Positions 2,852 through 54,391 of a stretch of 64,000 bases of DNA are shown piece by piece. The stretch covers positions 186,001 to 250,000 of IMG/VR virus record IMGVR_UViG_3300047472_000309. One strand, given 5' to 3'. The notes under the pieces were generated by a model that was not told the DNA's origin, ran no database searches, and saw only the letters and a program-made list of their open reading frames with translations. A program made the position numbers and the translations under genes. Numbering within the stretch: the first letter of the stretch is position 1; each line of letters begins with the position of its first letter.

Positions 2852-5800
2852 TTACTTCCAGGTGAGCACTGCCGTTGCATCAGGCGTACCGCCCGAGACC
2901 GGAATCGCCCCACCTGCGCGTGTTGCCGAAACCCGGTAATTCCCCAAACGCGTGACCTTTTGCATGTTGATCGCACTGATCTGCGTCGCATTGGTGACCA
3001 GCGTACCAATGAAAAGCACAGTCGGTGACTCCGGCTGATCAGTGGTGCGAATCACGTATGCCGGGGTCCCATTGGTGAACACCGCGTAGATGTAGAAAGT
3101 CGTGCTCGCCGGGTTGGCTTGGATAGTGGTCAGATCAATCGTGGCCGGTTGCAGCTTGTAATACACGCCATTCATGATCAAAGGCTGAATGTCCGTAAAG
3201 TAGACAATCCAGCCTTGGGCCACATCCTGCGACACCTGTACGGACCAATTGGCTTGCGCGGACTGGCTCCAGGCATCGTAAGTCGAGAGGTTGGTCGCAA
3301 AGGGTCGGAACGTGAGCTTAGTTAAGTCATCGGAATTCGTCACCAGTTGTTGGAATTCCCCGAAGCCCTTGCCAGGTACCCCACCCCAAAAGGTCGAGGC
3401 GATTTGCCCCCACACCGGATTGGTCACCAAACGATTCCAGTCCGGGCGGTTCGTACTCTTGGGCACCGCAAAGCGATACGTGTAGATGCCCGTGAAGATC
3501 ACCCGATTCAGGAAGTGTTTGGATGTCCCGCCGATGAGCCAGCAGTCCGAACACTCAACGATGGTCACCCCGCCACCCATGTAGGTGTACTTGTAGCTAC
3601 TTTGGTTATCCGTGAAGGCGCCCGCAAAGCTGTAATTCTGCTTCGCTGGGGACACCGATACCAACGACAAGCCCGTAATGGCCCCGGCGCGAGACCCCGC
3701 CGTAATGGAGAGTTCTCCCAGTGCCGCCATGTCTTTCGCCACGGCGTCGGTCGAAATCCAATTCAACACGGCAAACGGCGGAATCGAAGCGTTCTGCGGC
3801 ACCACGATGGTTACGCGCGAATCCACTGCGCCCACTCCCAATGCAGCGAGCATCGCGGACTTAATCGACCCATACAGCGCAGGCGCGATTGAGGTACTGC
3901 CCGTGAGCGTCAGGTTGCTATCACAGTTCGTGTAACCTGTATTGGAAATGTTCTCCATATACGAAGCACCCGTACAGGTGATCGCCCCTGCGGCGGTGAT
4001 TTCACTGATCATGCCCGCATACGTGACGGGATTCTTCCCGAGGTCCGTTAAGAACTGCCGGTAGGCGTTCGGGGCAAAACCCGTGAGCGTGCCGAAGTTC
4101 TGCGAACTGTAGGTATAGCCGTCCGCGCCCTTTTGAGCCAGGATCAGATCGGTCTGGAAACTTCCCGCGGCGTTCTTGCCACCCCCGTACACCATCACCC
4201 GGTTATTGGGAAGCTGAAACGAACCCATCAAGCCTCCGCCTACGGCCGACCCATACGCGGGTGTGAACACGGTGTTAAGCTTACCCGTGACTGTCAAACC
4301 ACCCGCCAGGGCGAGCACCGGCGCAATCGCGCCCGCGTTCAGCTTACACCGAGTGACCCAACAATTCAAATCCGGCTGGTTCTGATCCACCACCGACACC
4401 CAGTAACCCGATGGGTGATAGGAAAGCGTTTCACCCGTGAGCCAGTTACCTGAGGAAATCGAGCTGCGGTCTGTCAACAGAATAGGTCCCGAGAGAGCGA
4501 CCTTATTGCTACCGTCTAGCGCCACGGTTAGCGGACCCTTATAGTTGGACTCGACACCGCCGGTGCGATTCGTCGGATTCCACACAAAGGTGTAGAACAT
4601 ATTGACCACAGGTTGCTCGCCAGTAGCCGGATTTTGCACCAGGAACTCCACCATGATGCGGGTGCGGACATTGCCATCTGAGCCTTGTGCACTATACGTG
4701 CAGTGACCCAATTGGTTGGGATAGAACGGCACGATGTAGCAGCCGCTCGCACTCGGATCGCGCACCACCAGCGGTTGATTGGCCGCCACATCCACGCAGG
4801 CGTTGGCAAAGCGCATGTTGGTGGTGGAGATATTCTGCCCGTAGAAGCTATTGATCGTCCAGCCTGTCAACGCAGTGGGAACGACCGTATTGCCGTTGCC
4901 GATGGAGGACAAGGGGATCTGGTAGATCTGGTATTCCACTGGCAGACCGGTATTGTCCGCCAAGTCCGCATTAGGGAACATCAGGAACACCGAATCATTA
5001 CCGACGAACGCTTCCGGGTAGGCGTTATTAATCACGCCCGGCAAATTACTTGCCGAAATCACGCAGCCCGTGTGATTGGCGTCGTTAAAGGTGCCGTGGG
5101 TGAGCGAGAGGAACCAGTCCGTGAGATTGTTGCTGGCATCTTGCAGGCGACCCAAAATACAGGCGCCATTGATGTCACTGCGACACACGTAGCGTGCGCT
5201 GGAACCCGACGGGAAATACGCCGGAGCATACTTGCGATTGGTGCGGGTGGGCGTGAGATCTGTAGCCGCCAACACGTTTTTCGTATAGGCGTAGTAAACC
5301 CCTTGCTTCGAGCCATTGGTGCCACTGCGCAAGAACACAAAGGTGCCATCGTCTTCCACAATACCCGGATAGTTACGGGCTTCTCCGTAGAGGGCGATGT
5401 TGGTGGTGGCGCCCTCAAACGAACCCGAGACCCCGGCCGGAAGATAACTAAGCTCCCCGTAGCGCGTGAGCGGCATGCCACTAAAGGCTACCCGACCCTG
5501 CAACTGACTATCGACCTGGGTCTTCGAATAGGTGCCCGCCTGAAGTGGTGTGACGTTGTGCGATTGACCAGATGTCGCTGCGTGCGCATCCAGATCGGCT
5601 TCCAAGGCTGTGATCACTTCAGCCGGGGTTGCGTCACTCAGTTCAGCCGCATTGTCGGCCGTGACCGCTTCTTGCACCTTGGTATTCACCAGCGCTGAGT
5701 TATACGGCGCCACAAAGTCCGTCATGGCGGTCTGCAGACTTTGTAGGGAGGACGTGAGTGGGCTCGTACTCGGTGTTGCTTTCAGTGCTCGATGCGGTGC

Positions 5801-6145
5801 CGCCATCATCCGCAAAGCCATCCTGGGGGCAGGAGCAGGCTCGACCACTTCGTCGACCACTACTGGTTCAGGTTCAGGCGTTGGTTCGGGCTCAGCTTCA
5901 GGTTCAACCGCTGCGACAAGTTCTTCGACCACTGGTTCAGGTTCAGGAGCAGGTTCTTCTACCGGCTCAACGACAGTGGGTTCTTGCGCTGGCGCTTCAG
6001 CGACACTGAGGGTCTCGGTAGACTCAGTCGTCTCAGTTGGTGCCGCAGTCTCTTGAACTTCTTGTGGCGCTTCTTGTGGCATCAGTTCGCCAGTCGGATC
6101 GAGTATTTTGACCAGCGCTGCTAACTTGGTCTTGATCAAGCTCAT
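2852..6145 (-). CDS. Large virion structural/tail fibre protein with an acidic Pro/Glu-rich N-terminal extension
   Basis: 1097 aa, rich in Gly/Ser/Thr/Asn beta-strand sequence; shares N- and C-terminal motifs with 2073..2762; TATG element upstream. Confidence 0.7.
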   Translation of the reverse strand: MSLIKTKLAALVKILDPTGELMPQEAPQEVQETAAPTETTESTETLSVAEAPAQEPTVVEPVEEPAPEPEPVVEELVAAVEPEAEPEPTPEPEPVVVDEVVEPAPAPRMALRMMAAPHRALKATPSTSPLTSSLQSLQTAMTDFVAPYNSALVNTKVQEAVTADNAAELSDATPAEVITALEADLDAHAATSGQSHNVTPLQAGTYSKTQVDSQLQGRVAFSGMPLTRYGELSYLPAGVSGSFEGATTNIALYGEARNYPGIVEDDGTFVFLRSGTNGSKQGVYYAYTKNVLAATDLTPTRTNRKYAPAYFPSGSSARYVCRSDINGACILGRLQDASNNLTDWFLSLTHGTFNDANHTGCVISASNLPGVINNAYPEAFVGNDSVFLMFPNADLADNTGLPVEYQIYQIPLSSIGNGNTVVPTALTGWTINSFYGQNISTTNMRFANACVDVAANQPLVVRDPSASGCYIVPFYPNQLGHCTYSAQGSDGNVRTRIMVEFLVQNPATGEQPVVNMFYTFVWNPTNRTGGVESNYKGPLTVALDGSNKVALSGPILLTDRSSISSGNWLTGETLSYHPSGYWVSVVDQNQPDLNCWVTRCKLNAGAIAPVLALAGGLTVTGKLNTVFTPAYGSAVGGGLMGSFQLPNNRVMVYGGGKNAAGSFQTDLILAQKGADGYTYSSQNFGTLTGFAPNAYRQFLTDLGKNPVTYAGMISEITAAGAITCTGASYMENISNTGYTNCDSNLTLTGSTSIAPALYGSIKSAMLAALGVGAVDSRVTIVVPQNASIPPFAVLNWISTDAVAKDMAALGELSITAGSRAGAITGLSLVSVSPAKQNYSFAGAFTDNQSSYKYTYMGGGVTIVECSDCWLIGGTSKHFLNRVIFTGIYTYRFAVPKSTNRPDWNRLVTNPVWGQIASTFWGGVPGKGFGEFQQLVTNSDDLTKLTFRPFATNLSTYDAWSQSAQANWSVQVSQDVAQGWIVYFTDIQPLIMNGVYYKLQPATIDLTTIQANPASTTFYIYAVFTNGTPAYVIRTTDQPESPTVLFIGTLVTNATQISAINMQKVTRLGNYRVSATRAGGAIPVSGGTPDATAVLTWK

Positions 6146-21831: not shown

Positions 21832-22426
21832 GCTTGTTCTCCCACGGGGGTGTCACCCAAACGTCTTCGCTGTAAAGTTCGGGCGGAGTAAATTGTTTAT
21901 CGAGCAGCTGATTCGCTGCCGCGGCGATCAGCGCTGCTTCTTTCCGGTCGACGTAACGTCCCCAATTCGTGAGAAAGCCCTGGTCTCGGTGATACACGTG
22001 CGGGACCTTCATCATGTCCATGGCCCAGAGGACATGATGATGGCGTCCAGGCGCTTCGACTGCCCAGATCTGACCCGTACCGTAGTGCAGCACCGCGGAG
22101 CCCACAATGCGCTCTTCGTCGTACGGGTCCGCGCGATGTTCCTTGAACTCGTCCGGACTACCAATCAAACATTCCAGACCAGGAGACGCCCCGTCGTGAT
22201 CTGGAACCTTGACAGCACGGGGCGGTTCGGGTAGAACGAACCACCGCTTGAGCTTCTCATCGGAGAGAAGACTGAGCAGCGCCATGCCAGCCAAGAAAGT
22301 GAGGAGGTGGCTCGGGTGCGACACCCGCGCACTGACCAACATCCACACGGTTACAATTACTACTGCTACACGAAACCACACAAAGAAGCCAAACATCTTG
22401 TTATCCCCGAGAAGATGCTTATTCAA
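21713..22426 (-). CDS. Membrane-anchored hypothetical protein with a GRHH...QGFLT..GRYVDRKEA...LYSED domain
   Basis: Two N-terminal TM segments plus a recurrent phage domain. Confidence 0.65.
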   Translation of the reverse strand: MNKHLLGDNKMFGFFVWFRVAVVIVTVWMLVSARVSHPSHLLTFLAGMALLSLLSDEKLKRWFVLPEPPRAVKVPDHDGASPGLECLIGSPDEFKEHRADPYDEERIVGSAVLHYGTGQIWAVEAPGRHHHVLWAMDMMKVPHVYHRDQGFLTNWGRYVDRKEAALIAAAANQLLDKQFTPPELYSEDVWVTPPWENKHDGSSGTEGLHQPTVGQNDGAWGLEELHQRGASEGLGVV

Positions 22427-23066
22427 TTACTACCAGGAGTTGTCCGCTTCGGTATAGACGGCGAACGGTCGTCGGTGGGTTGGGATCAGGTTTCTTTTCT
22501 TGGGCAGGCTTCTTCGCCTTACGGCGTTTTCCGTGCGTCGCTTTAATCCCCTTTCTTATTTGGTCGACGTCAATGGGTGGTGCAATCTCATTCAGGTTGG
22601 CGTAATCTACGCCCGACAGTACTCGTGAGACGCCTGAAACGGACCCCCCGAATAGTTCAGCCATCTGCACCAGTGTGGCCTCCGGATGCGCTCGTTTGTA
22701 CTGGCGCATCTCGATCACCTTAGCAGGACTGAACGCATTATGCTCGCGCCGCTGGATAGCGAATTGGTGACTGCGCACCAAGCAGTTGCCTGGTCCGAAG
22801 TTCTTCGTCTGATCATCTAGCACGACTGCGTACTTCTCAGGATTACCCTGTTCTTGCAATTTCTCGGTTAGCCAGCTGAGGAAGTTCTGCAGCCCTAGGT
22901 TGTTATCCCGATGCCACGCCCACTCAACACTAATTCCCCTCGCACCGTAGCGCTGATAACTTGGATTTTCTTCACGGTAGCACTTGGCGTGAATCCCCAT
23001 CCAGCGCCAGTACAGTCGGTCTCGTGACATGCCGTGTGTATTACGTGCCCCGTGATTAGCGGCCAT
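22419..23066 (-). CDS. Degenerate HNH-like homing-endonuclease-family protein with a C-terminal HTH
   Basis: LY.RW..I..KC...NPSY.RYGARGISV...W...NF...FGPGNC; HTH ATLVQMAELFGGSVSGVSRVLSG. Confidence 0.7.
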   Translation of the reverse strand: MAANHGARNTHGMSRDRLYWRWMGIHAKCYREENPSYQRYGARGISVEWAWHRDNNLGLQNFLSWLTEKLQEQGNPEKYAVVLDDQTKNFGPGNCLVRSHQFAIQRREHNAFSPAKVIEMRQYKRAHPEATLVQMAELFGGSVSGVSRVLSGVDYANLNEIAPPIDVDQIRKGIKATHGKRRKAKKPAQEKKPDPNPPTTVRRLYRSGQLLVVIE

Positions 23067-24047: not shown

Positions 24048-24956
24048 TTAGCATTCGGCCACAGTGTACGGATTGGCGCTATGCACGCTGATGCCGTTGA
24101 GCAGCGTCTGGGCTTCTGCCAGCACTATGGGATTACGCACGTACGTGCCGTCCAGCATCGCAGAGACGTATTGTTTACCGAACGGGTAGCCTTCGGTGTC
24201 GCGCACCGATTCCAGACCCGTATAGTGCACCGGGCGCAGGTTCGTGCCCTTCCAGGCAGCGAGCACCCTGGTGTGGGTCGCATCCGTTTCGAAGAACACT
24301 ACGTCGATCGTCACGTCCTGCAGCGAGATCTTCGCCTTGTACGAACGGTTATCGCGCGCCTGTTCTTCGTCGAGCAGATAGTCGTTGTAGCGATCGCCCC
24401 AGTGATGCATGGTGGTGTCGATCACCCGATTCTGACGCTCCTGCCAGGTGAACTGGGCTTGCGAAGCAGTGGGCATCACGCGCGTTTGCGTCTTCGAGAG
24501 TTCGCCGACCTTGAAGCCCGTACGCAGGCCCTTGATCTTGATCGGATGCAATTCGACGAGAGCCTTGAGCGACTCATTGAAGCCCGGCTCGAAGAGCGTT
24601 TCACGCGCGCCGCGCACCAGGACAGCAATAATGTTGCGACCTTGGTAGGCGTTGTCGGCGATATGGCCGACGTCAGTGCGACGGGGTTGGGTTTCCGGTT
24701 GCTTCTCGGTATCTGCATTGCCCGCAGTGACCGGACCTTCATTGCCGATAGCCGGTACGCCGCCCATGATGCCGTCTTCCGGTGGCGACGGATTGTCGAT
24801 GCTCTCTGCGAGTTTAGCAGCGCCTCCCAGACGCGCTTCGACGTCCCGACCATTACCTGCCCCAGCGAGCAGCGACGAGACCTCCAGATGGTCTTGATTG
24901 CCGTCCTGATACTGCTTGTGGCCGTTGCTGTGTTTCTTACGTGATCCTGCCGACAT
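24048..24956 (-). CDS. Divergent paralogue of the phiKZ-type tail tube protein, with a ~100-aa disordered N-terminal extension
   Basis: TAAGGAG RBS; SLKALVELHPIKIKGL, VFFETDATHTRVLAAWKGTNLRP, AQTLLNGISVHSANPY. Family match is recalled, not searched. Confidence 0.6.
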   Translation of the reverse strand: MSAGSRKKHSNGHKQYQDGNQDHLEVSSLLAGAGNGRDVEARLGGAAKLAESIDNPSPPEDGIMGGVPAIGNEGPVTAGNADTEKQPETQPRRTDVGHIADNAYQGRNIIAVLVRGARETLFEPGFNESLKALVELHPIKIKGLRTGFKVGELSKTQTRVMPTASQAQFTWQERQNRVIDTTMHHWGDRYNDYLLDEEQARDNRSYKAKISLQDVTIDVVFFETDATHTRVLAAWKGTNLRPVHYTGLESVRDTEGYPFGKQYVSAMLDGTYVRNPIVLAEAQTLLNGISVHSANPYTVAEC

Positions 24957-24960
24957 CTTC

Positions 24961-25668
24961 CTACTCCTTACTGTTAACGTCTGCCGCAATAGCGGTGACG
25001 AATTCTTGTCGTTTGAATGGATTAGCGCTTTCAATAACCATACCGTTCAAGATCTCCTGCGCCTGCTCGATCACGCCGTCACCTTCTTGGTACGACTCGT
25101 AACCGAGCGTGAATTCGCACACGGAGCCCTTGACACGTCGATGAACGCGAAAGCCGTGGAAATTAAACACCGGCGAAGCACGCATCAGATCGCGCTTTGA
25201 TTGCAGGCCTGCGTATTCTTCCGGAAACATTTGGAACATGTGCCACGCCTGCACCACCTTAGTACAGGTGGGGTCCGGCTCGATAAACATCACGTCGATC
25301 GTGCACTGTTCCTTGGTTGGGCGTTCTTTGCCCTGGATCGGATGCGCGGTGTGCTGATAGCAGTTGTAATCACGCCGCCAATGCGTGAGCAGGCGATCGA
25401 CCGGACGGCCGTACTTCTCGCAGACCTTAAAGCGCGGGTCCGGTGCGAAGAAACCATCTTCAGTGAAGCCGGTCCAGAAACCATCAATCGAGTACGGATG
25501 GAGCTCCAGCATGGCTTTGATCGTGCCTGCGTACAGCTCGCCGTTTTCCTGGTCGGTCGACACGTTCCGCGTCACTGCCACGATCAGATTACGCGGTACG
25601 TACACCTGATTGCTAATCCACTCGGAAATGTCCGGCTGATATTCAGTTTCTTTGTATTGTGCGTCCAT
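24961..25668 (-). CDS. Divergent, shortened paralogue of the phiKZ-type tail tube protein
   Basis: PDISEWISNQVYVPRNLI, TIKAMLELHPYSIDG, EKYGRPV, MFIEPDPTCTKVVQAW..FQMFP, KRDL, AQEILNG..IESANPF. Confidence 0.65.
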   Translation of the reverse strand: MDAQYKETEYQPDISEWISNQVYVPRNLIVAVTRNVSTDQENGELYAGTIKAMLELHPYSIDGFWTGFTEDGFFAPDPRFKVCEKYGRPVDRLLTHWRRDYNCYQHTAHPIQGKERPTKEQCTIDVMFIEPDPTCTKVVQAWHMFQMFPEEYAGLQSKRDLMRASPVFNFHGFRVHRRVKGSVCEFTLGYESYQEGDGVIEQAQEILNGMVIESANPFKRQEFVTAIAADVNSKE

Positions 25669-25670
25669 GT

Positions 25671-25754
25671 TTATTCTTCGATGTCCTTCTGAAACAGCGG
25701 CACGTTGTTGATGAACTTCGCGAATTCTTTCCGTGTCAATGTGCTCCCGACCAT
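25671..25754 (-). CDS. 27-aa microprotein
   Basis: AAGGA RBS; MVGSTLTRKEFAKFINNVPLFQKDIEE fills the gap between its neighbours. Confidence 0.5.
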   Translation of the reverse strand: MVGSTLTRKEFAKFINNVPLFQKDIEE

Positions 25755-25756
25755 AC

Positions 25757-26023
25757 CTAATCCTTATCGACGATCGTCTTCATGAAGCTCGGTGAGAGCG
25801 TCATTACCGAAGCGCTCCACGTATGCTTATCGCCTGCGTTTTCTGCAGGCGTACCGGTCCGATGCATGAAGAGCCGTCCAAATCCCTGCTCGGTTCGAAT
25901 GAGCGTGAAATTGATATCGACATTTTCCTGCATGACGGGCTTTAAGAACTGTAAGAAGCTGATGATCTCCGGTGCCTCTTCACGCAGTAGCGCGAGTTCT
26001 TCTTCTAAGCTCTTTTCAGCCAT
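25757..26023 (-). CDS. Hypothetical protein
   Basis: 88 aa; tight packing. Confidence 0.65.
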   Translation of the reverse strand: MAEKSLEEELALLREEAPEIISFLQFLKPVMQENVDINFTLIRTEQGFGRLFMHRTGTPAENAGDKHTWSASVMTLSPSFMKTIVDKD

Positions 26024-26024
26024 G

Positions 26025-26438
26025 TTAATCCTGGTGATAAAAGTTGCAGCCTTTGGTGCCCCGTGAGCACACCCGGCTACTGAATTGATCGACTTCGCAC
26101 TGAGCTCGTGTCCGTAGTGCGCGATCCGTGGCTTGCGCTGCAGTCAGTTGCTCAGGTGTCAACATGAGTTCTGTGTGCACGGGCGGAGTGGCTTCGCGCT
26201 TGGCCCGATCTTCTGCGCTCTGGCAAGCAATCTTTTCCTTGGCATATCGGAATGCATCGGACGGACAGCCGACGTTCTTGATATAGACGCGCTCGGTCGG
26301 AGCAGGGGAGATCGTTTCCAGATCCCACAGGCCTGAACCTTCACAGTACATCAAGTTGTAGCTGATGCCGTCGTGATCGCAATACTCTTGCCACTCTTGC
26401 AGAGCAGGCGCTAGTTCTAGCCAGTTCACGCGAGACAT
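26025..26438 (-). CDS. Hypothetical protein with a Cys/His C-terminus
   Basis: C...SRVCSRGTKGC..YH terminal motif. Confidence 0.65.
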   Translation of the reverse strand: MSRVNWLELAPALQEWQEYCDHDGISYNLMYCEGSGLWDLETISPAPTERVYIKNVGCPSDAFRYAKEKIACQSAEDRAKREATPPVHTELMLTPEQLTAAQATDRALRTRAQCEVDQFSSRVCSRGTKGCNFYHQD

Positions 26439-26743
26439 GTTGCTCTCCTTTGTCGATATGCATCCATCCGAATCGACTCGGTCAACTCCAAGCCGATATG
26501 GGTACAGATGAAATCGGCGATGTGCCAGTCTGTACTTTCATGCTCCCAGGGCTCATCGTCAAGCACGGCGACGCGTAGCACGAGGTCACTGCCTTCCACC
26601 GTGTACGTAATGACATCGCCTTCAGGTGACATGACGACGACATGCACTGGCTCATTACCGTACGTGTAAACCGACCAGCCTTCTGGGAGCTCATAGACGG
26701 GCTTGGGCTTCTCATGGAATCGATGATAAACCAGTGCCTGCAT
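26426..26743 (-). CDS. Hypothetical protein
   Basis: 105 aa. Confidence 0.65.
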   Translation of the reverse strand: MQALVYHRFHEKPKPVYELPEGWSVYTYGNEPVHVVVMSPEGDVITYTVEGSDLVLRVAVLDDEPWEHESTDWHIADFICTHIGLELTESIRMDAYRQRRATCLA

Positions 26744-26745
26744 GA

Positions 26746-27834
26746 TTACACCGCCATCGGAGCAGTGAGTGCCGGATGCGGATCGTAGCCTTCCAGCATG
26801 AACCAGGTCGGATCGATCTCAGCCAGTGCCCTGATGGCCTTGCCCGTGACGGTCTCGCGCACATTGCGCTCATCGTAGCCTTCGAGCCCTGCCTGGAACA
26901 TCCGCTCAGCCTGACGTGCCAACGAATTGAACGACGGCATCTGTGGGTTGATGGCCAGTGTCGGCAACGCACGCGGTTCACGCGAGAGCTGCTCTTCCAC
27001 CTGGTCGAGGTGGTTCACGTAGATGTGCGCGTCATTGAACGTGAGATTGACCCACTTCGGTTTGAAGCCTGTCAGGCGCGCGACGATATGCAACAGCAGC
27101 GAAGCCGAGGCGATGTTAAACGGCACGCCCAAGAAGAAGTCCGCCGAGCGCTGCGTCATCGACAGCGACAGCTCACCCTTGGCGATGTTCGGCAAGAACT
27201 GATACAACAGGTGACACGGCGGCAATGCCATCGCATCCAACTGGGCCGGGTTCCAGGCGTGGAACAGGATGCGTCGATTGGTCGGCTCCAGAATCAGCTT
27301 CTGGATGCAATCGCCGAGCATGTCGATTTCCTTGAAGAACAGGCGTCGATTGAAGACCGAAAGATTACCACTCTTGATCACGGTTTCATCATGCTGGCTG
27401 GTGAACTTACCCATATCTTGCCAGCCGTCCCACTTGAGTCGCTCAGCAATCGCGACATCCCGCGGGTCCTTCAGATCGAGGACACGAAAGCCCGGCCATT
27501 CACGCCACATCGCGCCGTACACGTCACCGAGATCGTCTTCACCGCGACGATTCGGGTTCGCCAACCAGGCCTTGTTTTCGTTAGCGTTCTGATCCCACAC
27601 CTTGCAGCCGAGATCCCGGAAGGTTGCCGCACTACGTGCCGAACGCAAGAAACCGACCAGCTCACCGATGGCGGCTTTGAACGCCAGCTTCTTGGTCGTC
27701 ACCGCGGGGAATCCTTCTTGCAAGTCGAACCGCATGAACACTGTCGGGAACATGATCGTGTCGATCCCGGTGCGGTTTTCCTGACGCGTACCATTATCGC
27801 GGATGAAGGCCAGGGATTCGTTGTATTGCTTCAT
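26746..27834 (-). CDS. thyA: Thymidylate synthase
   Basis: RTG..T, FPAVTTKKL, MALPPCH catalytic Cys, QRSADFFLGVPFN, DAHIY.NH. Confidence 0.97.
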   Translation of the reverse strand: MKQYNESLAFIRDNGTRQENRTGIDTIMFPTVFMRFDLQEGFPAVTTKKLAFKAAIGELVGFLRSARSAATFRDLGCKVWDQNANENKAWLANPNRRGEDDLGDVYGAMWREWPGFRVLDLKDPRDVAIAERLKWDGWQDMGKFTSQHDETVIKSGNLSVFNRRLFFKEIDMLGDCIQKLILEPTNRRILFHAWNPAQLDAMALPPCHLLYQFLPNIAKGELSLSMTQRSADFFLGVPFNIASASLLLHIVARLTGFKPKWVNLTFNDAHIYVNHLDQVEEQLSREPRALPTLAINPQMPSFNSLARQAERMFQAGLEGYDERNVRETVTGKAIRALAEIDPTWFMLEGYDPHPALTAPMAV

Positions 27835-37324: not shown

Positions 37325-39205
37325 TTACAGCGTCGGCTCGTCAGCACCGATGAGATCCCCCGAGATATTCAGGTTCCCATTGATCACCACCGGCGTATCC
37401 GCCGCCACGACAATCACCACCTTCGCGTCGATCAGAGCCTGGACCCGCTCGTCGAGCTTGAGCAGGCGCGCTGCCATGTCTTCGGTCACGTAGTAGCGCA
37501 TCGAGTGATCAGCCAGGTCGTCGCCGGTGAGCGCCAGCACCATCTGCAGCACCTTGACCGTGAGGCGAGCCCGCGCGTCTTCGATGTTGGTGACATTGCT
37601 GACCGCTTCAAGCGTCACATGCGGCGCCGACACCATCGGCAGTTCGTCATCCGGCTGCGGCACGTTCACGCGCAAGCCTGCCGGAATCGGGCCACTGCCG
37701 AGCAGATGCAGGTTCATGCGGCGCAGCTGCGCGACTGTGGTATGGAACTCGATCGCCAGTTCGGTGATCTTGTCGCCTTCCTTCGCTTCGATGTAATACT
37801 GGTGCGTGACCGGATCGAAGATAGTCGGGCGGACTTGCGAAGGCTGCACGGTCGAGTCCACCCCGGCCAATGCTTCGAGCACAATGCGCGACCAGTTCTC
37901 GAACTTGAGTCCGCTCGCGAGCAGTTCCTTGATCGTGCCGCGCGGGCCGTCCTTCAGTTCTTCTTCTGCCACCCGTGCCTTGAGCGACTTGGGCACGACG
38001 ATCAGGTTCACTAGACCCAGGTGCACCTTGCCGACGTTATCGCTGTCGTCACGGATGAAACCGAGGTGTTCGAAGCGAAACAGCGACGGCGTATTGAGCG
38101 GGGTTGCTTGGAGACCGTCGGCGTCGACGAAGATGAGCTCTTCGCCTGCGACTTCGCGTTGCAGATTGGTGTTGATGGTCGCTTCGGTGTCGAGCACTGA
38201 CTGGTCGTTCACTTTGACGTCCAGATAATCGACGTGTCCGCCGTAGCCCACCGAGAACTTGCCACCGAGGCGCTCTTCGCCGACCTTCTTGGTGCGCTGA
38301 TACGAGGAGACTTCGTCGGTTTCCCAGTTGATCGGTAGCCCTTGACGGAAGGCTTCGTCGTCCTGAAACACGACCGGCGAATACGGCAGCAACTGACGGT
38401 AGAACGGATTGGCTTCCAGACCATCGCGCTGACGGATGACGGTCTCCGCACCGACGATGGAGAGCCACGTCTTGTATTCCTCAGCGCTTAAGCGCGTGAG
38501 GCCGTGCGTGAGTCCCATGCCGGGCAGATTGTCCGTGAAGTCCTTGTCGATGGCAAGGATGTGACCGGGGTGTTTATATGTCTTCATCGTGGTTCCTTTG
38601 TTTTTGTGAATCGATCGATGGGAAAGCATCTGGGCGAGAAATTCACTCGTCCAGCGCTCTTGCGGGGAAAGCAAACGCTTAGCCTGTTCCGCCTGCTGCC
38701 GCTCCTGCACCACCTGGGCGGGCTCATACGTGACGAAACTGTACTTGATACCGTGGATGCCTGAAGTGTGATCTTCACGCTGAGTCTCAGTCCACTGGGT
38801 CGGACGAATGGCCGGAAAGAAGGCATCACCCTCAAACTCTCGATCAATCTCGGTGATGAGGAGTTTGTCGGCCTTGGGTAAAGCTTGTTCGTAGAGGGTC
38901 GCACCGCCAATGAGAAACATCTCTTCCTCACCACGGTACTTACAGTATTCGATCGCGGCTTCCAGCGAGCCTGCGGTCAGACACCCTCTAAACTGCGCGG
39001 TCGCTTTGGTGGTCACGATAATGTTCTCGCGACCCGGCAAAGCGAAGCCGATGGACTCGTGCGTCTTGCGCCCCATGATGACGGGTTTGCCCGTCGTGAT
39101 GCGCTTAAAGTACGCCAAGTCCTCCGGCAGATGCCAGGGAAGTTGGTTGTTCAAACCAATCACACTGTTGCGGTCTCGCGCAGCGATGATGACAAGCTTA
39201 GTCAT
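37325..39205 (-). CDS. folA: Dihydrofolate reductase fused to a Nudix-like hydrolase and a LysM domain
   Basis: IG.NNQLPWHLPEDLAYFKRIT.GKPVIMGRKT, LPGRENI, IGGA, EGDAFFP; Nudix-like GGHVD...REVAGEEL...HLG; LysM KEGDKITELAIEFHTTVAQLRRMN...GLRVNVP. Confidence 0.88.
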   Translation of the reverse strand: MTKLVIIAARDRNSVIGLNNQLPWHLPEDLAYFKRITTGKPVIMGRKTHESIGFALPGRENIIVTTKATAQFRGCLTAGSLEAAIEYCKYRGEEEMFLIGGATLYEQALPKADKLLITEIDREFEGDAFFPAIRPTQWTETQREDHTSGIHGIKYSFVTYEPAQVVQERQQAEQAKRLLSPQERWTSEFLAQMLSHRSIHKNKGTTMKTYKHPGHILAIDKDFTDNLPGMGLTHGLTRLSAEEYKTWLSIVGAETVIRQRDGLEANPFYRQLLPYSPVVFQDDEAFRQGLPINWETDEVSSYQRTKKVGEERLGGKFSVGYGGHVDYLDVKVNDQSVLDTEATINTNLQREVAGEELIFVDADGLQATPLNTPSLFRFEHLGFIRDDSDNVGKVHLGLVNLIVVPKSLKARVAEEELKDGPRGTIKELLASGLKFENWSRIVLEALAGVDSTVQPSQVRPTIFDPVTHQYYIEAKEGDKITELAIEFHTTVAQLRRMNLHLLGSGPIPAGLRVNVPQPDDELPMVSAPHVTLEAVSNVTNIEDARARLTVKVLQMVLALTGDDLADHSMRYYVTEDMAARLLKLDERVQALIDAKVVIVVAADTPVVINGNLNISGDLIGADEPTL

Positions 39206-48873: not shown

Positions 48874-49941
48874 TTAGTCAACCGTGAAGGGTGCCGTAGG
48901 CGGCGTGAAGTTTGCGGTGTAGCGCGCCAGGGCGCTGATGCGCAACTCGTCGAGATAGCCCTGCACCGGCAACGCAGTGTTCGCCGCATAGTTACCGACG
49001 GTCAGCGGGCTCGTGTTATCACCCCAGGTATTCGGACTCGTCTTGGTCATTACGGCGACGCCGTCGAGATACAGCGTGTAGGCGGTGCCGTGTTTGACAA
49101 AGGCGTAATGGTGCCAGTTACTAATGCTGGGGGCGGGCGACATATTGTATTCGCCGAGAGTATCCAAAGACGAATAGATATTGCCGCCGTAAATCTCGAT
49201 AATCGTCGTGCCCTTGTGAATGATCACCCCTTCGGCGTTCGAACTATTCAGATAGAGCCAGAACTCGATAGTGAAATCAGATTTCAAGTGCAGATTAGCG
49301 ACATCAGGTGTTTGAACATAACTGCCACTCACACCCAGCATGGACGAGCCACCAAATTTCGACTGGGCAGTAGACAAGGCTACGGTGCCCGTTCTGGTGA
49401 AGGTGTGCTGACCCGTGGTGTCGGTAAAAGTAGTGGAGCCATTCGCCCCGTCCATGTGCATGAGCAGAACAGTCTGGGGGGTCGCCCAGTTCAGATTCAC
49501 CGTCGCAGTGCCATCTTCGTAAATCAATGACCCGCTCGCCTGGATGGTGGCCGTAGCTGCTCCACCACCTGCTGGATAAGTCGGTGCGCTCACCCAGCTG
49601 ATTTCGCCGCGAATGAAACCATACCAGTCTGCCACCAAAGCGAGTGTGGCAGCCGGGTCGGTGGTACCACTGGGAATAACTACTGCGCCGGTTGGACTGG
49701 CTATTTCTGCCGCCAAGGCGAGACGCTTATACGTGATATCGACACTACCGATAAAGTTCGCATAATTACCCTGCGGGCCGGTGCCGGTCAAGGTCACTTT
49801 AGTATCTGCGCCATTGGCAAAAGAACCTGTTTGTAAATTACTCACCGTGACTTCATTGGGCAGATTAGGCGCCGAGGCATTCGTGGCGTCGATCAAAGCC
49901 AGCAGATTTTCTACCGGGGTTTTGCTAGGATTGATTTTCAT
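48874..49941 (-). CDS. Tail fibre protein: family-A attachment module plus LamG/ConA lectin domain
   Basis: LLALID..N...YKRL.L N-module; TVLLMHMDG...FTIEFW...WHHYAFV...GYLDELRIS..ARYT.NFTPP. Confidence 0.85.
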   Translation of the reverse strand: MKINPSKTPVENLLALIDATNASAPNLPNEVTVSNLQTGSFANGADTKVTLTGTGPQGNYANFIGSVDITYKRLALAAEIASPTGAVVIPSGTTDPAATLALVADWYGFIRGEISWVSAPTYPAGGGAATATIQASGSLIYEDGTATVNLNWATPQTVLLMHMDGANGSTTFTDTTGQHTFTRTGTVALSTAQSKFGGSSMLGVSGSYVQTPDVANLHLKSDFTIEFWLYLNSSNAEGVIIHKGTTIIEIYGGNIYSSLDTLGEYNMSPAPSISNWHHYAFVKHGTAYTLYLDGVAVMTKTSPNTWGDNTSPLTVGNYAANTALPVQGYLDELRISALARYTANFTPPTAPFTVD

Positions 49942-49944
49942 CTG

Positions 49945-51039
49945 TTAGTCCATCGTGAAAGGAGCCGCGGACGGGGTAAAGTTACTCGTGTAGCGCGCTA
50001 CACGAGAAATGCGCACTTCATCAATGTCGCCATTGAAGTAAAGTTCTGAACCCGCTGCCACCACCACTGCTCCAATCGATGCAGCATACACAGGGGTCGG
50101 CAGTGCATTACTGGCAGTGATTGAGGCTTTGGCAACCCCGTTGATGTAGATGGTCCAGACGTTGCCTGAACGCACTAATGCGACGTGCTGCCAAGTGTTA
50201 GCCACAATGGTGCCTGCGGCCGTGCCCAAGCCATTGATGAAGTACGAACCAGTGGAGGCGCTGTTTGACGCATACAGTGCCAGACCGCCGCCGGATGAAT
50301 ATAATTGCAAACCCCACGAACAGCAAATAATTCCGCGCTGCGCTGCATCGACCACGCTAGGGTTGATCCAGGCTTCGAGGGTGAAGTCACCAGCCTGAAA
50401 ATTCATCAGGCTATTAGAAAACGTCAGGGCGGCTGCACCGTTAAAAGCAGCCGAGCCTGCGCCGAACTTCTTCGCGGCTGTACTGAGTGTGACCGCACTA
50501 TTAGTAAGGGTGGCGCCGCCGTCATCGGTAAAGGGGATGGCATCAGCGTGGACCAGCAGATTAGTGAGCGGTTGGGTCCAGTTGACCGTGACGCTGGTCG
50601 AGCCGTCCTCGTAGACGTAGGAGCCACTTGATTGCAGCGTCACCGAGCCATTACCTGAACTCGCGGGAATCGTCAAACCGGGGGCGGTAATTTCACCCGG
50701 AATGAAGCCGTAATAGTTCTCGATCGCAAGCAGCGCAGCCGCGAGCGACGATGCGCGAGACACGGCAAGCGTACCGGTCGGGCTTGCTGTTTCTGCCGCC
50801 AGCGTCAGGCGCTTATACGTCACATCGACGCTGCCGGTAAAGTTGGCGTAATTACCCTGCGGGCCTGCACCAGTGAGGGTTATCTTCGTATCGGCGCCGT
50901 TCGCATACGTGCCTGACTGAAGGTTACTCACTGTCACCTCATTGGGAAGATTCGGCGCGGAAGGGTTCGAGGCATCAATAAGTGCCAACAGGTTTTGAAG
51001 GGCACTCTTACTCGGATCAATTTTCATACTGGTCGCCAA
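49945..51039 (-). CDS. Tail fibre protein: family-A module plus LamG domain; recent paralogue of 48874..49941
   Basis: Near-identical N-terminus; DFTLEAWI...WQHVALVR...GDIDEVRISR. Start may be ATG 51027. Confidence 0.85.
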   Translation of the reverse strand: MATSMKIDPSKSALQNLLALIDASNPSAPNLPNEVTVSNLQSGTYANGADTKITLTGAGPQGNYANFTGSVDVTYKRLTLAAETASPTGTLAVSRASSLAAALLAIENYYGFIPGEITAPGLTIPASSGNGSVTLQSSGSYVYEDGSTSVTVNWTQPLTNLLVHADAIPFTDDGGATLTNSAVTLSTAAKKFGAGSAAFNGAAALTFSNSLMNFQAGDFTLEAWINPSVVDAAQRGIICCSWGLQLYSSGGGLALYASNSASTGSYFINGLGTAAGTIVANTWQHVALVRSGNVWTIYINGVAKASITASNALPTPVYAASIGAVVVAAGSELYFNGDIDEVRISRVARYTSNFTPSAAPFTMD

Positions 51040-51759: not shown

Positions 51760-53307
51760 TTAGTCTATCGTGAATGCCGCAGCAGGCGGGGTGAAGTTTG
51801 CCGAGTAACGAGCAATCTTACTAAGGCGTAGCTCATCGATCCGGCCACTGAACGGCAGGTACGTGCTACCATTCAGGAAGCTACCGATCCACAACGCATA
51901 GTTGTTGCTACCAAACGTCGCGGAGCTCGTAACAGACTGAACCAATACCCCATCAACAAAACACGACCAGGTGTTGCCAGAGCGCACAAACGCAAAGTGC
52001 TGCCACGTTCCAACTTTGGTCTTCGACGAGTCCGGTGTGCCGACGATGACAGTGCCATCGGGACCCAAGATACGAACCAATCCACTAGTGGACTGGATGT
52101 ACTGATACCCGGCCTGCGCCGAAGTACCTTTGGACAGGATCATGCCGTTCTGGGTTATGTTGGTGTGCCATGCCCAGAATTCGATCGTGAGATCGCCCGT
52201 AAAGCTCAGATCCCCTGGATCGGTCACTGCAAGATAACCGGAACCCGACGGGAAATAGCCCGCCCCAAACATGCCGACGCTGCCTGCTGCCGCTGCGCCG
52301 TTGTTCGTCACCGTATGGCTGAGAACTTCCGTGTAGCCGGTATTGCCTGCATTATCGAAATGCATCAACAGCTTCGTACTGGCGGCAGGTCCTTGACCGG
52401 CAGCGTTGGCAAAGCCCGGCAGATTCAAGCTAGTGACCGCCGCGCTCAGCGCCACTGTGTTCATCAGGTAGACGTCGGTACCCGGCTTATACACGTAACT
52501 GTTTGCATCAGCCACCAGGTGAAGCTTGGTGGTGCCTGCAGCAACGGGACCGTCTACCACATCCATCGGATCAAGGGCCAAGCCATACTTCGTGTTGACC
52601 TGCGCGATCAGGGCACGGATCGTCGTGGCCGAGGCGATCGTACCGAGCAACCAGGTGTTATTGGCGCCACCTAGAAACGCGTTCGCAATATCCGTGCGAT
52701 TGTAATACAGCTTGTACGTGCCCGAGTACTGCTGCAGCAACGTCCCGATCGGCGCCACCGTCACGTAGGTGTTACAGTTCAGCTTCGAACTATCTACAAC
52801 GGGCGCGCTCACCGATAACTGCGACTGGGAGATCGTCTGCTTCGCGTCAGCCTGAATCAATGCCCACAAGCCCGTCAAACCACCTGTCTTGACCTGGGCC
52901 AGTTTCTTCTGCATGACGAATGCAGAGATTTGACGCAACTGACCTTTGGTTGACGACTTCTGCATCACAAAAGCTGACACCTGACGCAGCGCGCCACTAC
53001 TGGACAGCTTCGTCCACGTCACAGCAGGCATTGCCCGGAACCGGGCCGTCAGCGCATCCTGCGTCCATTGCAAGGCTGCCACGCGCCGAATTGACACTGC
53101 GGGATAATCTTGCGACCATTGCAGGGCTGTCACCTTACGCAACGTAACTGGGGTGGGTGAGCTGAACCACTGCACCGCCTGCATCTGACGGAAATACGCG
53201 TTGATGTTTTGTGTCGTCCACACGACAGGCGCGGCTTGACGAACCTGGGCACTGCTGCTCGTTCCTTGCCACACCAGTGGAGCGAAGTAGCGAATTGTTG
53301 TCGTCAT
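51760..53307 (-). CDS. Fibre/scaffold protein: eight 17-aa repeats, family-A module and LamG domain
   Basis: Arg at residues 6, 23, 40, 57, 74, 91, 108, 125; YKLYYNRTDI; LLMHFD...GRIDELRLSKIARY. Confidence 0.85.
   Translation of the reverse strand: MTTTIRYFAPLVWQGTSSSAQVRQAAPVVWTTQNINAYFRQMQAVQWFSSPTPVTLRKVTALQWSQDYPAVSIRRVAALQWTQDALTARFRAMPAVTWTKLSSSGALRQVSAFVMQKSSTKGQLRQISAFVMQKKLAQVKTGGLTGLWALIQADAKQTISQSQLSVSAPVVDSSKLNCNTYVTVAPIGTLLQQYSGTYKLYYNRTDIANAFLGGANNTWLLGTIASATTIRALIAQVNTKYGLALDPMDVVDGPVAAGTTKLHLVADANSYVYKPGTDVYLMNTVALSAAVTSLNLPGFANAAGQGPAASTKLLMHFDNAGNTGYTEVLSHTVTNNGAAAAGSVGMFGAGYFPSGSGYLAVTDPGDLSFTGDLTIEFWAWHTNITQNGMILSKGTSAQAGYQYIQSTSGLVRILGPDGTVIVGTPDSSKTKVGTWQHFAFVRSGNTWSCFVDGVLVQSVTSSATFGSNNYALWIGSFLNGSTYLPFSGRIDELRLSKIARYSANFTPPAAAFTID
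52906..53292 (-). repeat. Eight tandem 17-codon (51-nt) repeats, consensus R-x-h-x-A-h-x-W/M
   Basis: RYFAPLVW, RQAAPVVW, RQMQAVQW, RKVTALQW, RRVAALQW, RAMPAVTW, RQVSAFVM, RQISAFVM at an exact 17-aa period. Confidence 0.9.
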
Positions 53308-53317
53308 TCACTCCTCC

Positions 53318-54391
53318 TTAGTTAGTGGGCGTCAGTACGAACTGAGTCTGATTAATCTTCGTGCCCGTCCAGCTCGCACCATCCGGTGCTTTTGTCTGCC
53401 AAGGCAACTTCTGGTTTAGTACCAATCCATTGCCATTGGCAAACTGACCAAGCGATGAGACGTTACTGGAAGCGTCCGTAAAGGTCGCTGCAATCTTGGC
53501 TGGACCGGCCGCACTGGGTTGAAATGAGAGCGTCGGTTGAACTGCCAGGACTTTCTGGCCAGTATCATTAACCGTGGCGAGCATCGTCACCGCCAGGGAC
53601 TGGTTATCTACCGGAGACTGCGCATACGGACTGATGACAGGCGGGTTCTGGTTAGCCGTATTGAGTACCGTCACCAGATCGGCTGCGCCGTTGGGTGTCC
53701 ATTCCGAGCCAGAGACGGCCGCCGCGCGCGACGCTTTGGCGCGAATCGGCCCCAGTCGACCCGGCGTCGATGCATCTACATCCAGGAAGTAGAAATCGCG
53801 ATAGCCGCGCGCGTAATTCGCGCTGCCGGTCGACGCACCCCCAAAGGTAATGTAGCCGGTGCTGGCAAATACAGCGGACGTCACTGTACCGGAATTGATC
53901 AGAATGCCGTTGCCGTATACCTGGAACGTCAGCGCGACGCGATCGATAAAGACCTCGATGTAGATCTCACCACCCACTCCCACCATCCCTGCTGCGATCA
54001 GATGTGACTCATCGAGCAGCGAAGTCCAGCTACCGAAGGACGTGTTGCTGGACACGATGACAACGTGGCACGCCCCCACCGTGTTATTCACGATCAACTT
54101 CGTGCGGAAACCAAACCAATACTGCGTTGCCCCACTCCAGTCTTGCACGGCTGCGGTGGGCACGAAAAGCGCCCCACATTGTCCGGACGAATTGGCAGCG
54201 TTCGACAGAAAGCCATCGGCCGTCACGGAGAAGATGTTGCTTGGGGTACTGTTATTAACGTAGGTGAGCGGCTGACCGACGTTGCCAGTGTACTGGTTAT
54301 AGATCGTGTTGCCGTTATAACTCGATCCAGCAGCACTCAGTGTCATCCCCACTGGCGCATTCTCAAAATGCCACAAATCGTGAAGGGCCAT
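53318..54391 (-). CDS. Family-B virion/fibre protein (probable beta-sandwich)
   Basis: MALHDLWHFE; FGFRTK; YIEVFID; RGYRDFYFLD...RLGPI. Confidence 0.75.
   Translation of the reverse strand: MALHDLWHFENAPVGMTLSAAGSSYNGNTIYNQYTGNVGQPLTYVNNSTPSNIFSVTADGFLSNAANSSGQCGALFVPTAAVQDWSGATQYWFGFRTKLIVNNTVGACHVVIVSSNTSFGSWTSLLDESHLIAAGMVGVGGEIYIEVFIDRVALTFQVYGNGILINSGTVTSAVFASTGYITFGGASTGSANYARGYRDFYFLDVDASTPGRLGPIRAKASRAAAVSGSEWTPNGAADLVTVLNTANQNPPVISPYAQSPVDNQSLAVTMLATVNDTGQKVLAVQPTLSFQPSAAGPAKIAATFTDASSNVSSLGQFANGNGLVLNQKLPWQTKAPDGASWTGTKINQTQFVLTPTN

What the first reader, a model, noticed from the sequence alone, without database searches (positions are those of the whole stretch)
24048..25668. Two loop-deleted tail-tube paralogues in the accessory region: candidate decoys for tube-sensing immunity
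Seen: the tandem ORFs are clear paralogues lying among non-structural genes. By recalled motifs (PDxxEWxSNQxYVxRNLI, LxELHP, EKYGxP, FxEPDPT..KVV.AW..NMFP, KRDL, ANP[YF]) they match the phiKZ gp30-type tail tube. The ~28-aa segment between GLxxG and FxxxEKYG, the expected ring-linking beta-hairpin, is cut to about 9 and 18 aa, and one copy gains a disordered N-terminal arm. Established: DSR2 is triggered by monomeric tail tube protein. Inference: polymerisation-incompetent self-mimics that occupy immune sensors or chaperone the true tube protein. I know of no described system of this kind.
Basis: partly seen in the sequence, partly recalled or inferred. Interest (0 to 1): 0.85.

Follow-up and report, generated by a model that had tools for sequence, protein, structure and literature searches.

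The report
Truncated tail-tube paralogues in jumbo phage
A 310-kb jumbo phage carries, besides its normal tail-tube gene, two adjacent diverged copies that have lost the parts that lock tube subunits together; they belong to a widespread, undescribed gene family whose job (immune decoy, assembly helper or minor virion part) is still unknown.

Summary
Gene A (24961-25668, minus strand, 235 aa) and gene B (24048-24956, 302 aa) are translationally coupled paralogues (30% identity). Both match the phiKZ gp30-type tail-tube family PF23806. B's model hits the phiKZ and phiKp24 tubes.

They are extra copies. The same contig has a canonical tube gene beside the sheath gene and a separate gp88-type tube initiator.

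Against 75 canonical tubes with a rigid layout (about 49 / 40 / 51 / 70 / 32-53 aa), A and B have a hairpin segment of 20 and 29 aa. They have almost no C-terminal extension. A lacks half the N-terminal domain. B has an unrelated 106-aa low-confidence arm with strongly conserved motifs.

This is not a recent self-copy. About 70 cluster representatives share the short-loop layout, and all lie outside the canonical clade. In every context examined they sit in non-structural blocks, five lineages next to thymidylate synthase. Among 50,697 GenBank phages only Burkholderia phage FLC9 has them.

Both genes are under purifying selection, and B is exchanged by recombination.

Loss of the interlocking parts is shown. 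The decoy function is untested, and several points count against it.

The parts
24961..25668 (-). Gene A: 235-aa short-loop tail-tube paralogue (stop TAG 24961-24963)
   Evidence: ORF; PF23806 E=1.9e-25; PHIKZ030 and Goslar tube by sequence; layout N-term 25 / loop 20 / C-term 19 aa against canonical 49/40/53; dN/dS 0.15-0.19
24048..24956 (-). Gene B: 302-aa short-loop tail-tube paralogue with an N-terminal arm (start ATG 24956, not the TTG at 25034)
   Evidence: ORF; start supported by SD and conservation; PF23806 E=1.5e-12; AF2 core pLDDT 93-99; Foldseek hits to phiKp24 and phiKZ tubes, E about 1e-12; dN/dS 0.18-0.33
24639..24956 (-). B N-terminal arm (residues 1-106): low-confidence, G/A/N/D/E/P-rich, with a strongly conserved motif at residues 1-43 (basic KKH..HK patch, LEV, AGAGNGRD) and a GIGNEGPVTAGNADT motif at 69-83
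   Evidence: Alignments A5 and A6; pLDDT about 50 with two short helices; the arm was found only on PF23806 proteins from contigs up to about 327 kb; no other copy in the window or in FLC9
24964..24969 (-). Shine-Dalgarno AAGGAG for B, inside the last codons of A (translational coupling)
   Evidence: Sequence read
25417..25482 (-). A residues G63-E84: remnant of the hairpin segment (20 aa between anchors against 38-40 in canonical tubes)
   Evidence: Alignments A1 and fam.aln
24438..24530 (-). B residues G143-E173: shortened hairpin segment (29 aa). Modelled strands 148-152 and 158-162 form the hairpin, and the canonical tubes' extra 11 aa fall at its tip
26426..26743 (-). 105-aa ORF, orthologue of FLC9 gp259. 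In FLC9 and relative L009 it lies between the A-like and B-like genes and overlaps the B start, so it may be an associated gene, relocated here
   Evidence: 59% identity to FLC9 202571-202798; gene tables; no Pfam or PHROG hit
26746..27834 (-). Thymidylate synthase, the conserved syntenic landmark beside short-loop paralogues in five diverged jumbo-phage lineages
   Evidence: phrog_160 E=5e-90; contexts L009, L079, L080, L081, L082

Best explanation
**Shown**

A and B belong to an old, so far unnamed branch of the jumbo-phage tail-tube family PF23806. I call them short-loop tube paralogues.

- They keep the tube beta-sandwich core.
- They have lost or replaced the elements that interlock canonical subunits: the N-terminal domain, much of the hairpin and the C-terminal extension.
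- They exist alongside a complete set of tube-axis proteins.
- They are encoded in non-structural blocks, in five lineages beside thymidylate synthase. This block corresponds to phiKZ's largely dispensable arm, which has been suggested to be defence-related.
- They are kept by purifying selection, and B alleles are swapped by recombination between close relatives.

**Inferred**

They do not build the tail tube. They act as soluble monomers or rings in the infected cell. The most likely class of action is accessory host interaction. The tube-fold core would engage a factor that recognises tube protein, most plausibly an immune sensor, without allowing the productive assembly or signalling that the real tube causes. 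B's conserved N-terminal peptide would hold a second, conserved partner.

The confidence given is for this functional reading. The 'shown' part I rate at about 0.85.
For: - **Family and fold:**
- **Extra to the canonical tube and initiator on the same contig:**. FLC9 has separate orthologues of phiKZ gp30, gp88, gp182, gp98, gp99 and gp101.
- **Missing interlocking elements:**, read against the phiKZ and Goslar descriptions.
- **Outside the canonical clade:** SH-aLRT 100.
- **Divergence contrast:** tube-axis proteins are 87-88% identical between the window phage and FLC9, but A and B only 33-35%. That is in about the lowest sixth of 64 syntenic orthologues.
- **Conserved non-structural neighbourhood:** found in all seven lineages examined.
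- **Local variability:** a variability island lies around A. B's core is 15-79% nt identical while the flanks are 94-99%.
- **Selection:** purifying.
- **phiKZ counterpart:** the syntenic arm is largely non-essential and holds defence activators and inhibitors.
- **Known triggers:** tube proteins trigger DSR2 and Avs16.
Against: - No binding, timing or virion data exist.
- About 30% identity to the phage's own tube is weak mimicry.
- The shortened hairpin is the epitope modelled for Avs16.
- Sensors that fire on binding would be triggered by a simple mimic.
- The family is old and syntenically fixed, which looks more like a stable accessory function than a fast-turnover anti-defence gene.
- No PADLOC or other annotation gives a hint.
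- Absence from phiKZ, Goslar and all other cultured relatives fits many roles equally well.
Confidence: 0.35

Rival explanations
1. Minor virion component. A and B form a lineage-specific ring or decoration somewhere on the tail, baseplate or neck, as tube-derived gp88 (phiKZ), gp62 (Goslar) or gp48, gp54 and gp3 (T4) do. B's arm would anchor it.
For: - Tube-fold paralogues with specialised structural roles are the rule in contractile tails. Foldseek also hits T4 neck-tail chains and eCIS cap and baseplate chains.
- Structural genes are scattered in Chimalliviridae genomes, so gene position is weak evidence.
- Goslar virions hold many abundant proteins not yet placed.
- B's allele swapping resembles that of host-range proteins.
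Against: - All tube-axis positions defined in phiKZ already have separate, well-conserved orthologues in FLC9. The tube and initiator are also present on the window contig.
- A and B are 33-35% identical between phages whose tube and initiator are 87-88% identical.
- The elements used for docking on neighbouring rings are missing.
- In every lineage examined they sit in a nucleotide-metabolism or replication block.
- They are absent from every cultured relative with a solved or proteomically mapped virion.
Confidence: 0.22
2. Assembly control of the real tube. A core-only tube homologue binds tube monomers or tube ends. It would act as a chaperone or cap that prevents premature or off-baseplate polymerisation in the cytoplasm.
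For: - It has the same fold and keeps the conserved core motifs (RN-I, ELHP, EPDPT, AW).
- Lacking the C-terminal extension, it would terminate stacking.
- Chimalliviruses assemble tails in the cytoplasm.
Against: - The partner would be a protein that is 100% identical between two relatives whose A and B are 83-87% identical, and 88% identical to FLC9's tube where A and B are 33-35%. A tight chaperone should co-vary with its client.
- Most cultured Chimalliviridae make tubes without such a gene.
- It is not encoded near the tube or sheath genes.
Confidence: 0.15
3. Exapted tube fold with an unrelated role. Examples are an Hcp-like ring that carries other proteins, or a protein packaged into the head. 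In the latter case B's arm would be a targeting propeptide removed at the conserved GNE|G site, leaving a 229-aa core the size of A.
For: - B's first 43 residues and the GIGNEGPV motif are better conserved than the tube core itself.
- GNE fits the S/A/G-x-E motif that I recall for the phiKZ head protease. Head proteins are processed by gp175.
- Core charge is less constrained than in canonical tubes.
- Some family members carry extra 144-219-aa C-terminal domains with no Pfam match.
Against: - The cleavage motif is short and recalled from memory.
- A has no such arm.
- The arm is not shared with any non-tube protein, unlike a modular targeting signal.
- There is no direct evidence.
Confidence: 0.2
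4. Decaying duplicates with no function.
For: - Very low identity to the parent gene.
- Loss of several structural elements.
Against: - Intact ORFs across many lineages, with dN/dS of 0.15-0.33.
- Conserved position and conserved motifs.
- A strong SD and coupled translation.
Confidence: 0.03

Closest known systems
phiKZ gp30 / phiKp24 / Goslar gp217 tail tube protein (Pfam PF23806)
   Same: - Same sequence family and fold. Core motifs are shared.
- These are the best Foldseek and PDB sequence hits.
   Different: - Outside the canonical clade.
- Hairpin segment of 20 or 29 aa against 38-40 aa.
- C-terminal extension almost absent.
- N-terminal domain halved (A) or replaced by an unrelated arm (B).
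- Not next to the sheath gene.
- A separate canonical copy exists in the same genome.
Tube-derived baseplate and neck paralogues: phiKZ gp88 / Goslar gp62 (PF23971); T4 gp48, gp54, gp3
   Same: They show the same principle: a duplicated tube fold specialised for a non-tube role. gp88 keeps the core and E-loop of gp30.
   Different: - A different Pfam family.
- The window phage and FLC9 have their own gp88 orthologue.
- A and B have a shortened rather than a retained hairpin, and they evolve far faster.
DSAD1 and other phage inhibitors of tube-sensing immunity (DSR2, Avs16)
   Same: This is the proposed functional class. These are phage proteins that stop a sensor from responding to tail-tube protein.
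   Different: - DSAD1 is not reported as a tube homologue.
- No tube-fold decoy has been described.
- No similarity or interaction was tested here.
Burkholderia phage FLC9 gp262 and gp258 (annotated hypothetical proteins)
   Same: They are the only counterparts in a cultured phage. Gene order is the same downstream of thymidylate synthase, and B's arm motifs are conserved.
   Different: - Only 33-35% identical.
- FLC9's A-like protein has a 92-aa N-terminal extension.
- Three genes separate the pair.

Membership tests
Pfam PF23806 Phage_TTP_14 (phiKZ gp30-type tail tube sequence family) | HMM match above the curated gathering score (27 bits) | tested here: met
   A scores 90.3 bits and B 48.0 bits. 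phrog_3185 also matches both.
Pfam PF23806 Phage_TTP_14 (phiKZ gp30-type tail tube sequence family) | Tail-tube beta-sandwich fold | tested here: met
   B's model has core pLDDT 93-99. Its top PDB hits are 8bfk, 9xps and 9xpf at E about 1e-12. A's own model was poor (pLDDT 46.7 with a shallow alignment), so A rests on sequence homology.
Functional tail tube subunit of Chimalliviridae (phiKZ gp30, Goslar gp217) | Belongs to the canonical tube clade | tested here: not met
   The canonical tubes form one clade (SH-aLRT 100, 76 rows). A and B lie outside it.
Functional tail tube subunit of Chimalliviridae (phiKZ gp30, Goslar gp217) | Full-length hairpin segment (38-40 aa, almost always 39-40, between the GL and EKYG anchors) | tested here: not met
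   A has 20 aa and B has 29 aa. The 75 canonical representatives have 38-40 aa.
Functional tail tube subunit of Chimalliviridae (phiKZ gp30, Goslar gp217) | [quoted passage not shown] | tested here: not met
   A has 25 aa. B has an unrelated 106-aa arm. The role of this domain is taken from PMC13250141 and PMC13742148.
Functional tail tube subunit of Chimalliviridae (phiKZ gp30, Goslar gp217) | [quoted passage not shown] | tested here: not met
   A has 19 aa and B has 7 aa.
Functional tail tube subunit of Chimalliviridae (phiKZ gp30, Goslar gp217) | Encoded beside the sheath gene | tested here: not met
   The canonical copy lies about 170 kb away at contig position 37920-38837. It lies directly after a gene that I read as the sheath gene from its position and FLC9 synteny; that gene itself was not scanned. 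A and B lie downstream of thymidylate synthase.
Functional tail tube subunit of Chimalliviridae (phiKZ gp30, Goslar gp217) | Polymerises into the tube; present in virions | not testable with these tools
   No multimer prediction tool and no proteome of FLC9 or the uncultured phage are available.
Tube initiator (phiKZ gp88 / Goslar gp62, Pfam PF23971) | PF23971 match and orthology to gp88 | tested here: not met
   gp88 matches PF23971, not PF23806. Separate orthologues exist in FLC9 (E=4e-58) and on the window's contig (L087).
Anti-defence decoy or inhibitor of tube-sensing immunity (functional class) | Located in an accessory, variable, non-structural region | tested here: met
   The phiKZ counterpart arm is largely non-essential and has been suggested to be defence-related.
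Anti-defence decoy or inhibitor of tube-sensing immunity (functional class) | Keeps the surface that the sensor recognises | tested here: inconclusive
   The fold is kept. Identity to the phage's own tube is only about 30%. The hairpin contacted by Avs16 in models is almost gone in A and shortened in B.
Anti-defence decoy or inhibitor of tube-sensing immunity (functional class) | Binds a sensor without activating it; rescues the phage from defence | not testable with these tools
   This needs experiments.

The most novel reading that the evidence does not exclude
Short-loop tube paralogues are a widespread jumbo-phage counter-defence. They would be expressed from the accessory arm as non-polymerising tube-fold proteins. 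They would bind and silence host sensors (DSR2-like, Avs16-like or unknown) that detect free tail-tube protein. B's conserved N-terminal peptide would provide the inhibitory contact. This would be the first structural-protein self-mimic decoy described in phages.
Probability: 0.2. Interest if true: 0.85.

Novelty: new variant of a known kind. Interest (0 to 1): 0.6.

Why it matters
Tail-tube protein is among the conserved phage proteins that bacterial immune sensors detect. A family of tube copies that can no longer build tubes, kept by selection in the dispensable arm of many uncultured jumbo phages, is an obvious place to look for a new way of handling that exposure. It is equally a place to look for an unknown step of jumbo-phage tail assembly.

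The family has a cultured member, Burkholderia phage FLC9 (gp258 and gp262), so the question can be tested directly. The rigid layout of canonical tubes also gives a simple rule for telling true tube genes from these paralogues during annotation. Both are currently labelled 'tail tube' or 'virion structural protein' by Pfam and PHROGs.

Tried and rejected
- **Tube initiator.** Rejected. phiKZ gp88 is PF23971, and separate orthologues exist.
- **Spacer, terminator, stopper or hub.** Rejected for FLC9, which has separate orthologues of phiKZ gp182, gp98, gp99 and gp101.
- **phiKZ gp232 and gp233.** These have the same lengths as B and A and lie beside phiKZ's ThyA. They are unrelated by BLAST and HMM, so the match is coincidence.
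- **Expression timing from promoters.**
  - No sigma-70 sites or terminators above chance.
  - The recalled phiKZ early motif TATATTAC is not enriched: 16 found against 11.5 expected.
  - A motif of hairpin, T-run and TTATGCC precedes structural and non-structural genes alike. None lies between 36861 and 23170, so A and B sit inside a long polycistronic block and timing is unresolved.
- **Faster evolution than the tube among close relatives.** Only partly true. dN/dS values are similar, and the difference is mostly regional (dS) and due to recombination. The contrast with FLC9 (33-35% against 87-88%) stands.
- **B's arm as a module shared with other proteins.** Not found.
- **Extra N- and C-terminal domains of family members.** No Pfam match.
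- **PADLOC.** No match.
- **First structure model of A.** The 7-sequence alignment gave an unusable model.
- **Megablast of the locus against GenBank phages.** No match.
Full report
**What is there**

The window is part of a 310,654-bp uncultured jumbo-phage contig, IMGVR_UViG_3300047472_000309. All genes around the finding are on the minus strand.

- Gene A runs 24961-25668 (235 aa).
- Gene B is listed mechanically as a 328-aa TTG ORF (24048-25034) that overlaps A.
- The N-terminus conserved in relatives begins at the ATG at 24956. That ATG has an AAGGAG Shine-Dalgarno 7 nt upstream, inside the last codons of A. So B is 302 aa and is translationally coupled to A.
- A and B are 30% identical (E=2e-23). 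The window holds no third copy.

**Family and fold**

- Both proteins pass the Pfam threshold for PF23806 Phage_TTP_14 and match phrog_3185.
- By sequence they match the PDB chains PHIKZ030 and the Goslar tail tube.
- With a 143-sequence alignment, B's core (residues about 100-295) is modelled at pLDDT 93-99.
- Its best structural matches are the tail inner tubes of phiKp24 and phiKZ (E about 1e-12) and jumbo-phage tube proteins in BFVD.
- A's own model, made with a shallow alignment, was unusable.

**They are extra copies**

- The nearest cultured relative is Burkholderia phage FLC9 (322 kb). The window is collinear with FLC9 178-254 kb.
- FLC9 has three PF23806 genes:
  - gp30, next to a 711-aa sheath-sized gene;
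  - gp262, which is A-like;
  - gp258, which is B-like.
- FLC9 also has separate, clear orthologues of every phiKZ tube-axis protein defined by the phiKZ atlas (PMC13250141). These are the tube gp30, initiator gp88, spacer gp182, terminator gp98, stopper gp99 and hub gp101.
- phiKZ gp88 is a different Pfam family, PF23971.
- The window's own contig carries a canonical 306-aa tube, 88% identical to FLC9 gp30 (L026). It lies directly after a gene that I take to be the sheath gene by position and FLC9 synteny.
- The contig also carries a gp88-type initiator, 87% identical to FLC9's (L087).

**What is missing**

I aligned the 148 best representatives from a profile search of 1.84 billion proteins (388 hits at E<=1e-3) together with reference sequences.

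| Segment | 75 canonical tubes | A | B |
|---|---|---|---|
| Before the RN motif | 46-52 aa (typical) | 25 aa | 106 aa |
| G of GL to E of EKYG | 38-40 aa (almost all 39-40) | 20 aa | 29 aa |
| Next block | 50-53 aa (typical) | 45 aa | 49 aa |
| Following block | 70 aa (typical) | 85 aa | 71 aa |
| After ANP | 32-53 aa | 19 aa | 7 aa |

- In B's model the shortened segment is a beta-hairpin (strands 148-152 and 158-162). The canonical tubes' extra 11 residues fall at its tip. A keeps almost none of it.
- The phiKZ and Goslar papers describe the N-terminal domain as contacting the neighbour within a ring. They describe the C-terminal extension as threading into the layers above.
- The Avs preprint describes the tube hairpin as the interface between stacked rings.
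- That this hairpin is the phiKZ 'E-loop' is my inference. I could not read coordinates.
- Whether the short loop is a deletion or the long loop is an insertion cannot be settled without a root. Loss is more plausible, because tube function is ancestral.

**An old, widespread family**

- About 70 of the 148 representatives share the short-loop layout.
  - Some have a short N-terminus (A-like, 180-260 aa).
  - Others have long N-terminal arms of 66-299 aa (B-like).
  - A few have 144-219-aa C-terminal additions without any Pfam match.
- In a maximum-likelihood tree the canonical tubes form one clade (SH-aLRT 100). All short-loop proteins lie outside it.
- B groups with FLC9 gp258 (support 99). 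A groups with its close relatives (support 97).
- The profile was built from A- and B-like sequences, so the top 150 hits over-represent paralogues.
- Among 50,697 GenBank phage records only FLC9 has more than one PF23806 locus. This held with four different paralogue queries; with the B core as query the listed records agree. phiKZ's thymidylate-synthase block has none.

**Context**

- In diverged lineages the paralogue lies a few small genes from thymidylate synthase. It sits among genes with T4_Y16D, BCS1-AAA, RlaP, DUF1653 or DUF3307 domains. This holds for the window and its relatives, for L079, L080 and L081, and for L082.
- L078 and L083 are also non-structural contexts.
- Only the FLC9-like clade has the A+B pair.
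- In phiKZ the corresponding arm (orf184-304 plus orf1-20) holds ThyA gp235, Tad1 and the Juk activator. It is largely non-essential and has been suggested to hold anti-defence loci.

**Evolution**

- Between the window phage and FLC9 the tube and initiator are 87-88% identical. A and B are 33-35% identical. That is in about the lowest sixth of 64 syntenic orthologues, which range from 28% to 86%.
- Between the window phage and contig 3300047319_001872 the tube is 100% identical. A is 83-86% and B 83-87% identical, depending on the aligner.
- dN/dS is 0.15-0.19 for A and 0.18-0.33 for B, so both genes are functional. Much of the difference from the tube is regional: dS is far higher here.
- Against relative L006:
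  - A is 94-99% identical at the nucleotide level.
  - B's core is only 15-79% identical, with dS 0.71, which indicates a recombinant allele.
  - The roughly 2 kb from thymidylate synthase to A is largely non-homologous.
  - The downstream flank is 94-99% identical, and the sequence upstream of that 2 kb stretch reaches 88-97%.

**B's arm**

- The arm is modelled with low confidence.
- Its first 43 residues are strongly conserved across most of a clade whose cores are only 38-54% identical. So is a GIGNEGPVTAGNADT motif where it is present.
- The arm occurs only on PF23806 proteins, from contigs of up to about 327 kb. It has no other copy in the window or in FLC9.
- It is therefore a functional peptide with a conserved partner, not just a disordered tail.

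**Interpretation**

- Firmly supported: these are non-canonical tube-fold paralogues that lack the interlocking parts. They are extra to a full tube-axis set and are kept by selection in the accessory arm.
- The function is inferred. I favour a soluble accessory role directed at something that recognises tube protein, most plausibly immunity (0.35).
- The other candidates are a minor virion part (0.22), an exapted ring or packaged protein (0.20), a tube assembly regulator (0.15) and decay (0.03).
- Points against a simple decoy:
  - identity to the phage's own tube is low;
  - the hairpin that Avs16 is modelled to contact is lost;
  - a mimic of a sensor's trigger must bind without activating it.
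- Expression timing could not be read from the sequence.
- No paper describing such paralogues or a tube-fold decoy was found.

Noticed in passing
window 48874-49941, 49945-51039, 51760-53307: Three tandem paralogues share a C-terminal domain that matches phrog_3545 and baseplate-wedge or virion-structural PHROGs. FLC9 has counterparts at 234-240 kb.
   Followed up: partly
window 53318-54391, 54407-55441 (and probably 55522-56598): A second tandem array: the first two genes match phrog_2448 (unknown function) and are 58-63% identical to FLC9 genes. The third was not scanned; it is 67% identical to its FLC9 counterpart.
   Followed up: no
window 37325-39205: A 626-aa protein with an N-terminal dihydrofolate reductase (phrog_316) fused to a phrog_8902 domain of unknown function.
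   Followed up: no
window 25674-27809 (ThyA to gene A): This roughly 2-kb stretch is 27-65% nt identical or non-homologous between the window phage and relative L006. Most of the surrounding sequence is about 90-99% identical. ThyA here is 362 aa, but 295 aa in relative L009.
   Followed up: partly
window 36861, 23170, 51085, 48235, 6191, 55472, 58384, 9225, 2813, 17229 (minus strand): A recurrent intergenic unit: a T-run followed by TTATG(CC), preceded at several of these sites by a GC-rich hairpin. It resembles a terminator-promoter pair. A similar AT-rich run followed by TTATG lies upstream of the presumed sheath gene (L026 near 3655). It precedes both structural and non-structural genes.
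   Followed up: partly
window 26426-26743: A 105-aa ORF orthologous to FLC9 gp259. In FLC9 and L009 this gene lies between the A-like and B-like genes and overlaps the B start. Here it lies just after ThyA.
   Followed up: partly
window 22419-23066: An HNH endonuclease gene (phrog_3377) sits just downstream of a TTATGCC motif in a 236-nt intergenic gap. It may be a mobile insertion.
   Followed up: no
window 25671-25754: A possible 27-codon mini-ORF fills the gap upstream of A and ends 2 nt before A's ATG.
   Followed up: no
L017 24300-26178 (phiKZ gp232, gp233): The two genes upstream of phiKZ's thymidylate synthase are 302 and 235 aa, exactly the lengths of B and A. They show no similarity by BLAST or HMM, so this is coincidence.
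   Followed up: yes
window 2852-6145: A 1097-aa protein matches phrog_3573 (E=4e-153) with a tail-fibre-like stretch. It has no FLC9 counterpart by tblastn, although its neighbours are syntenic.
   Followed up: no
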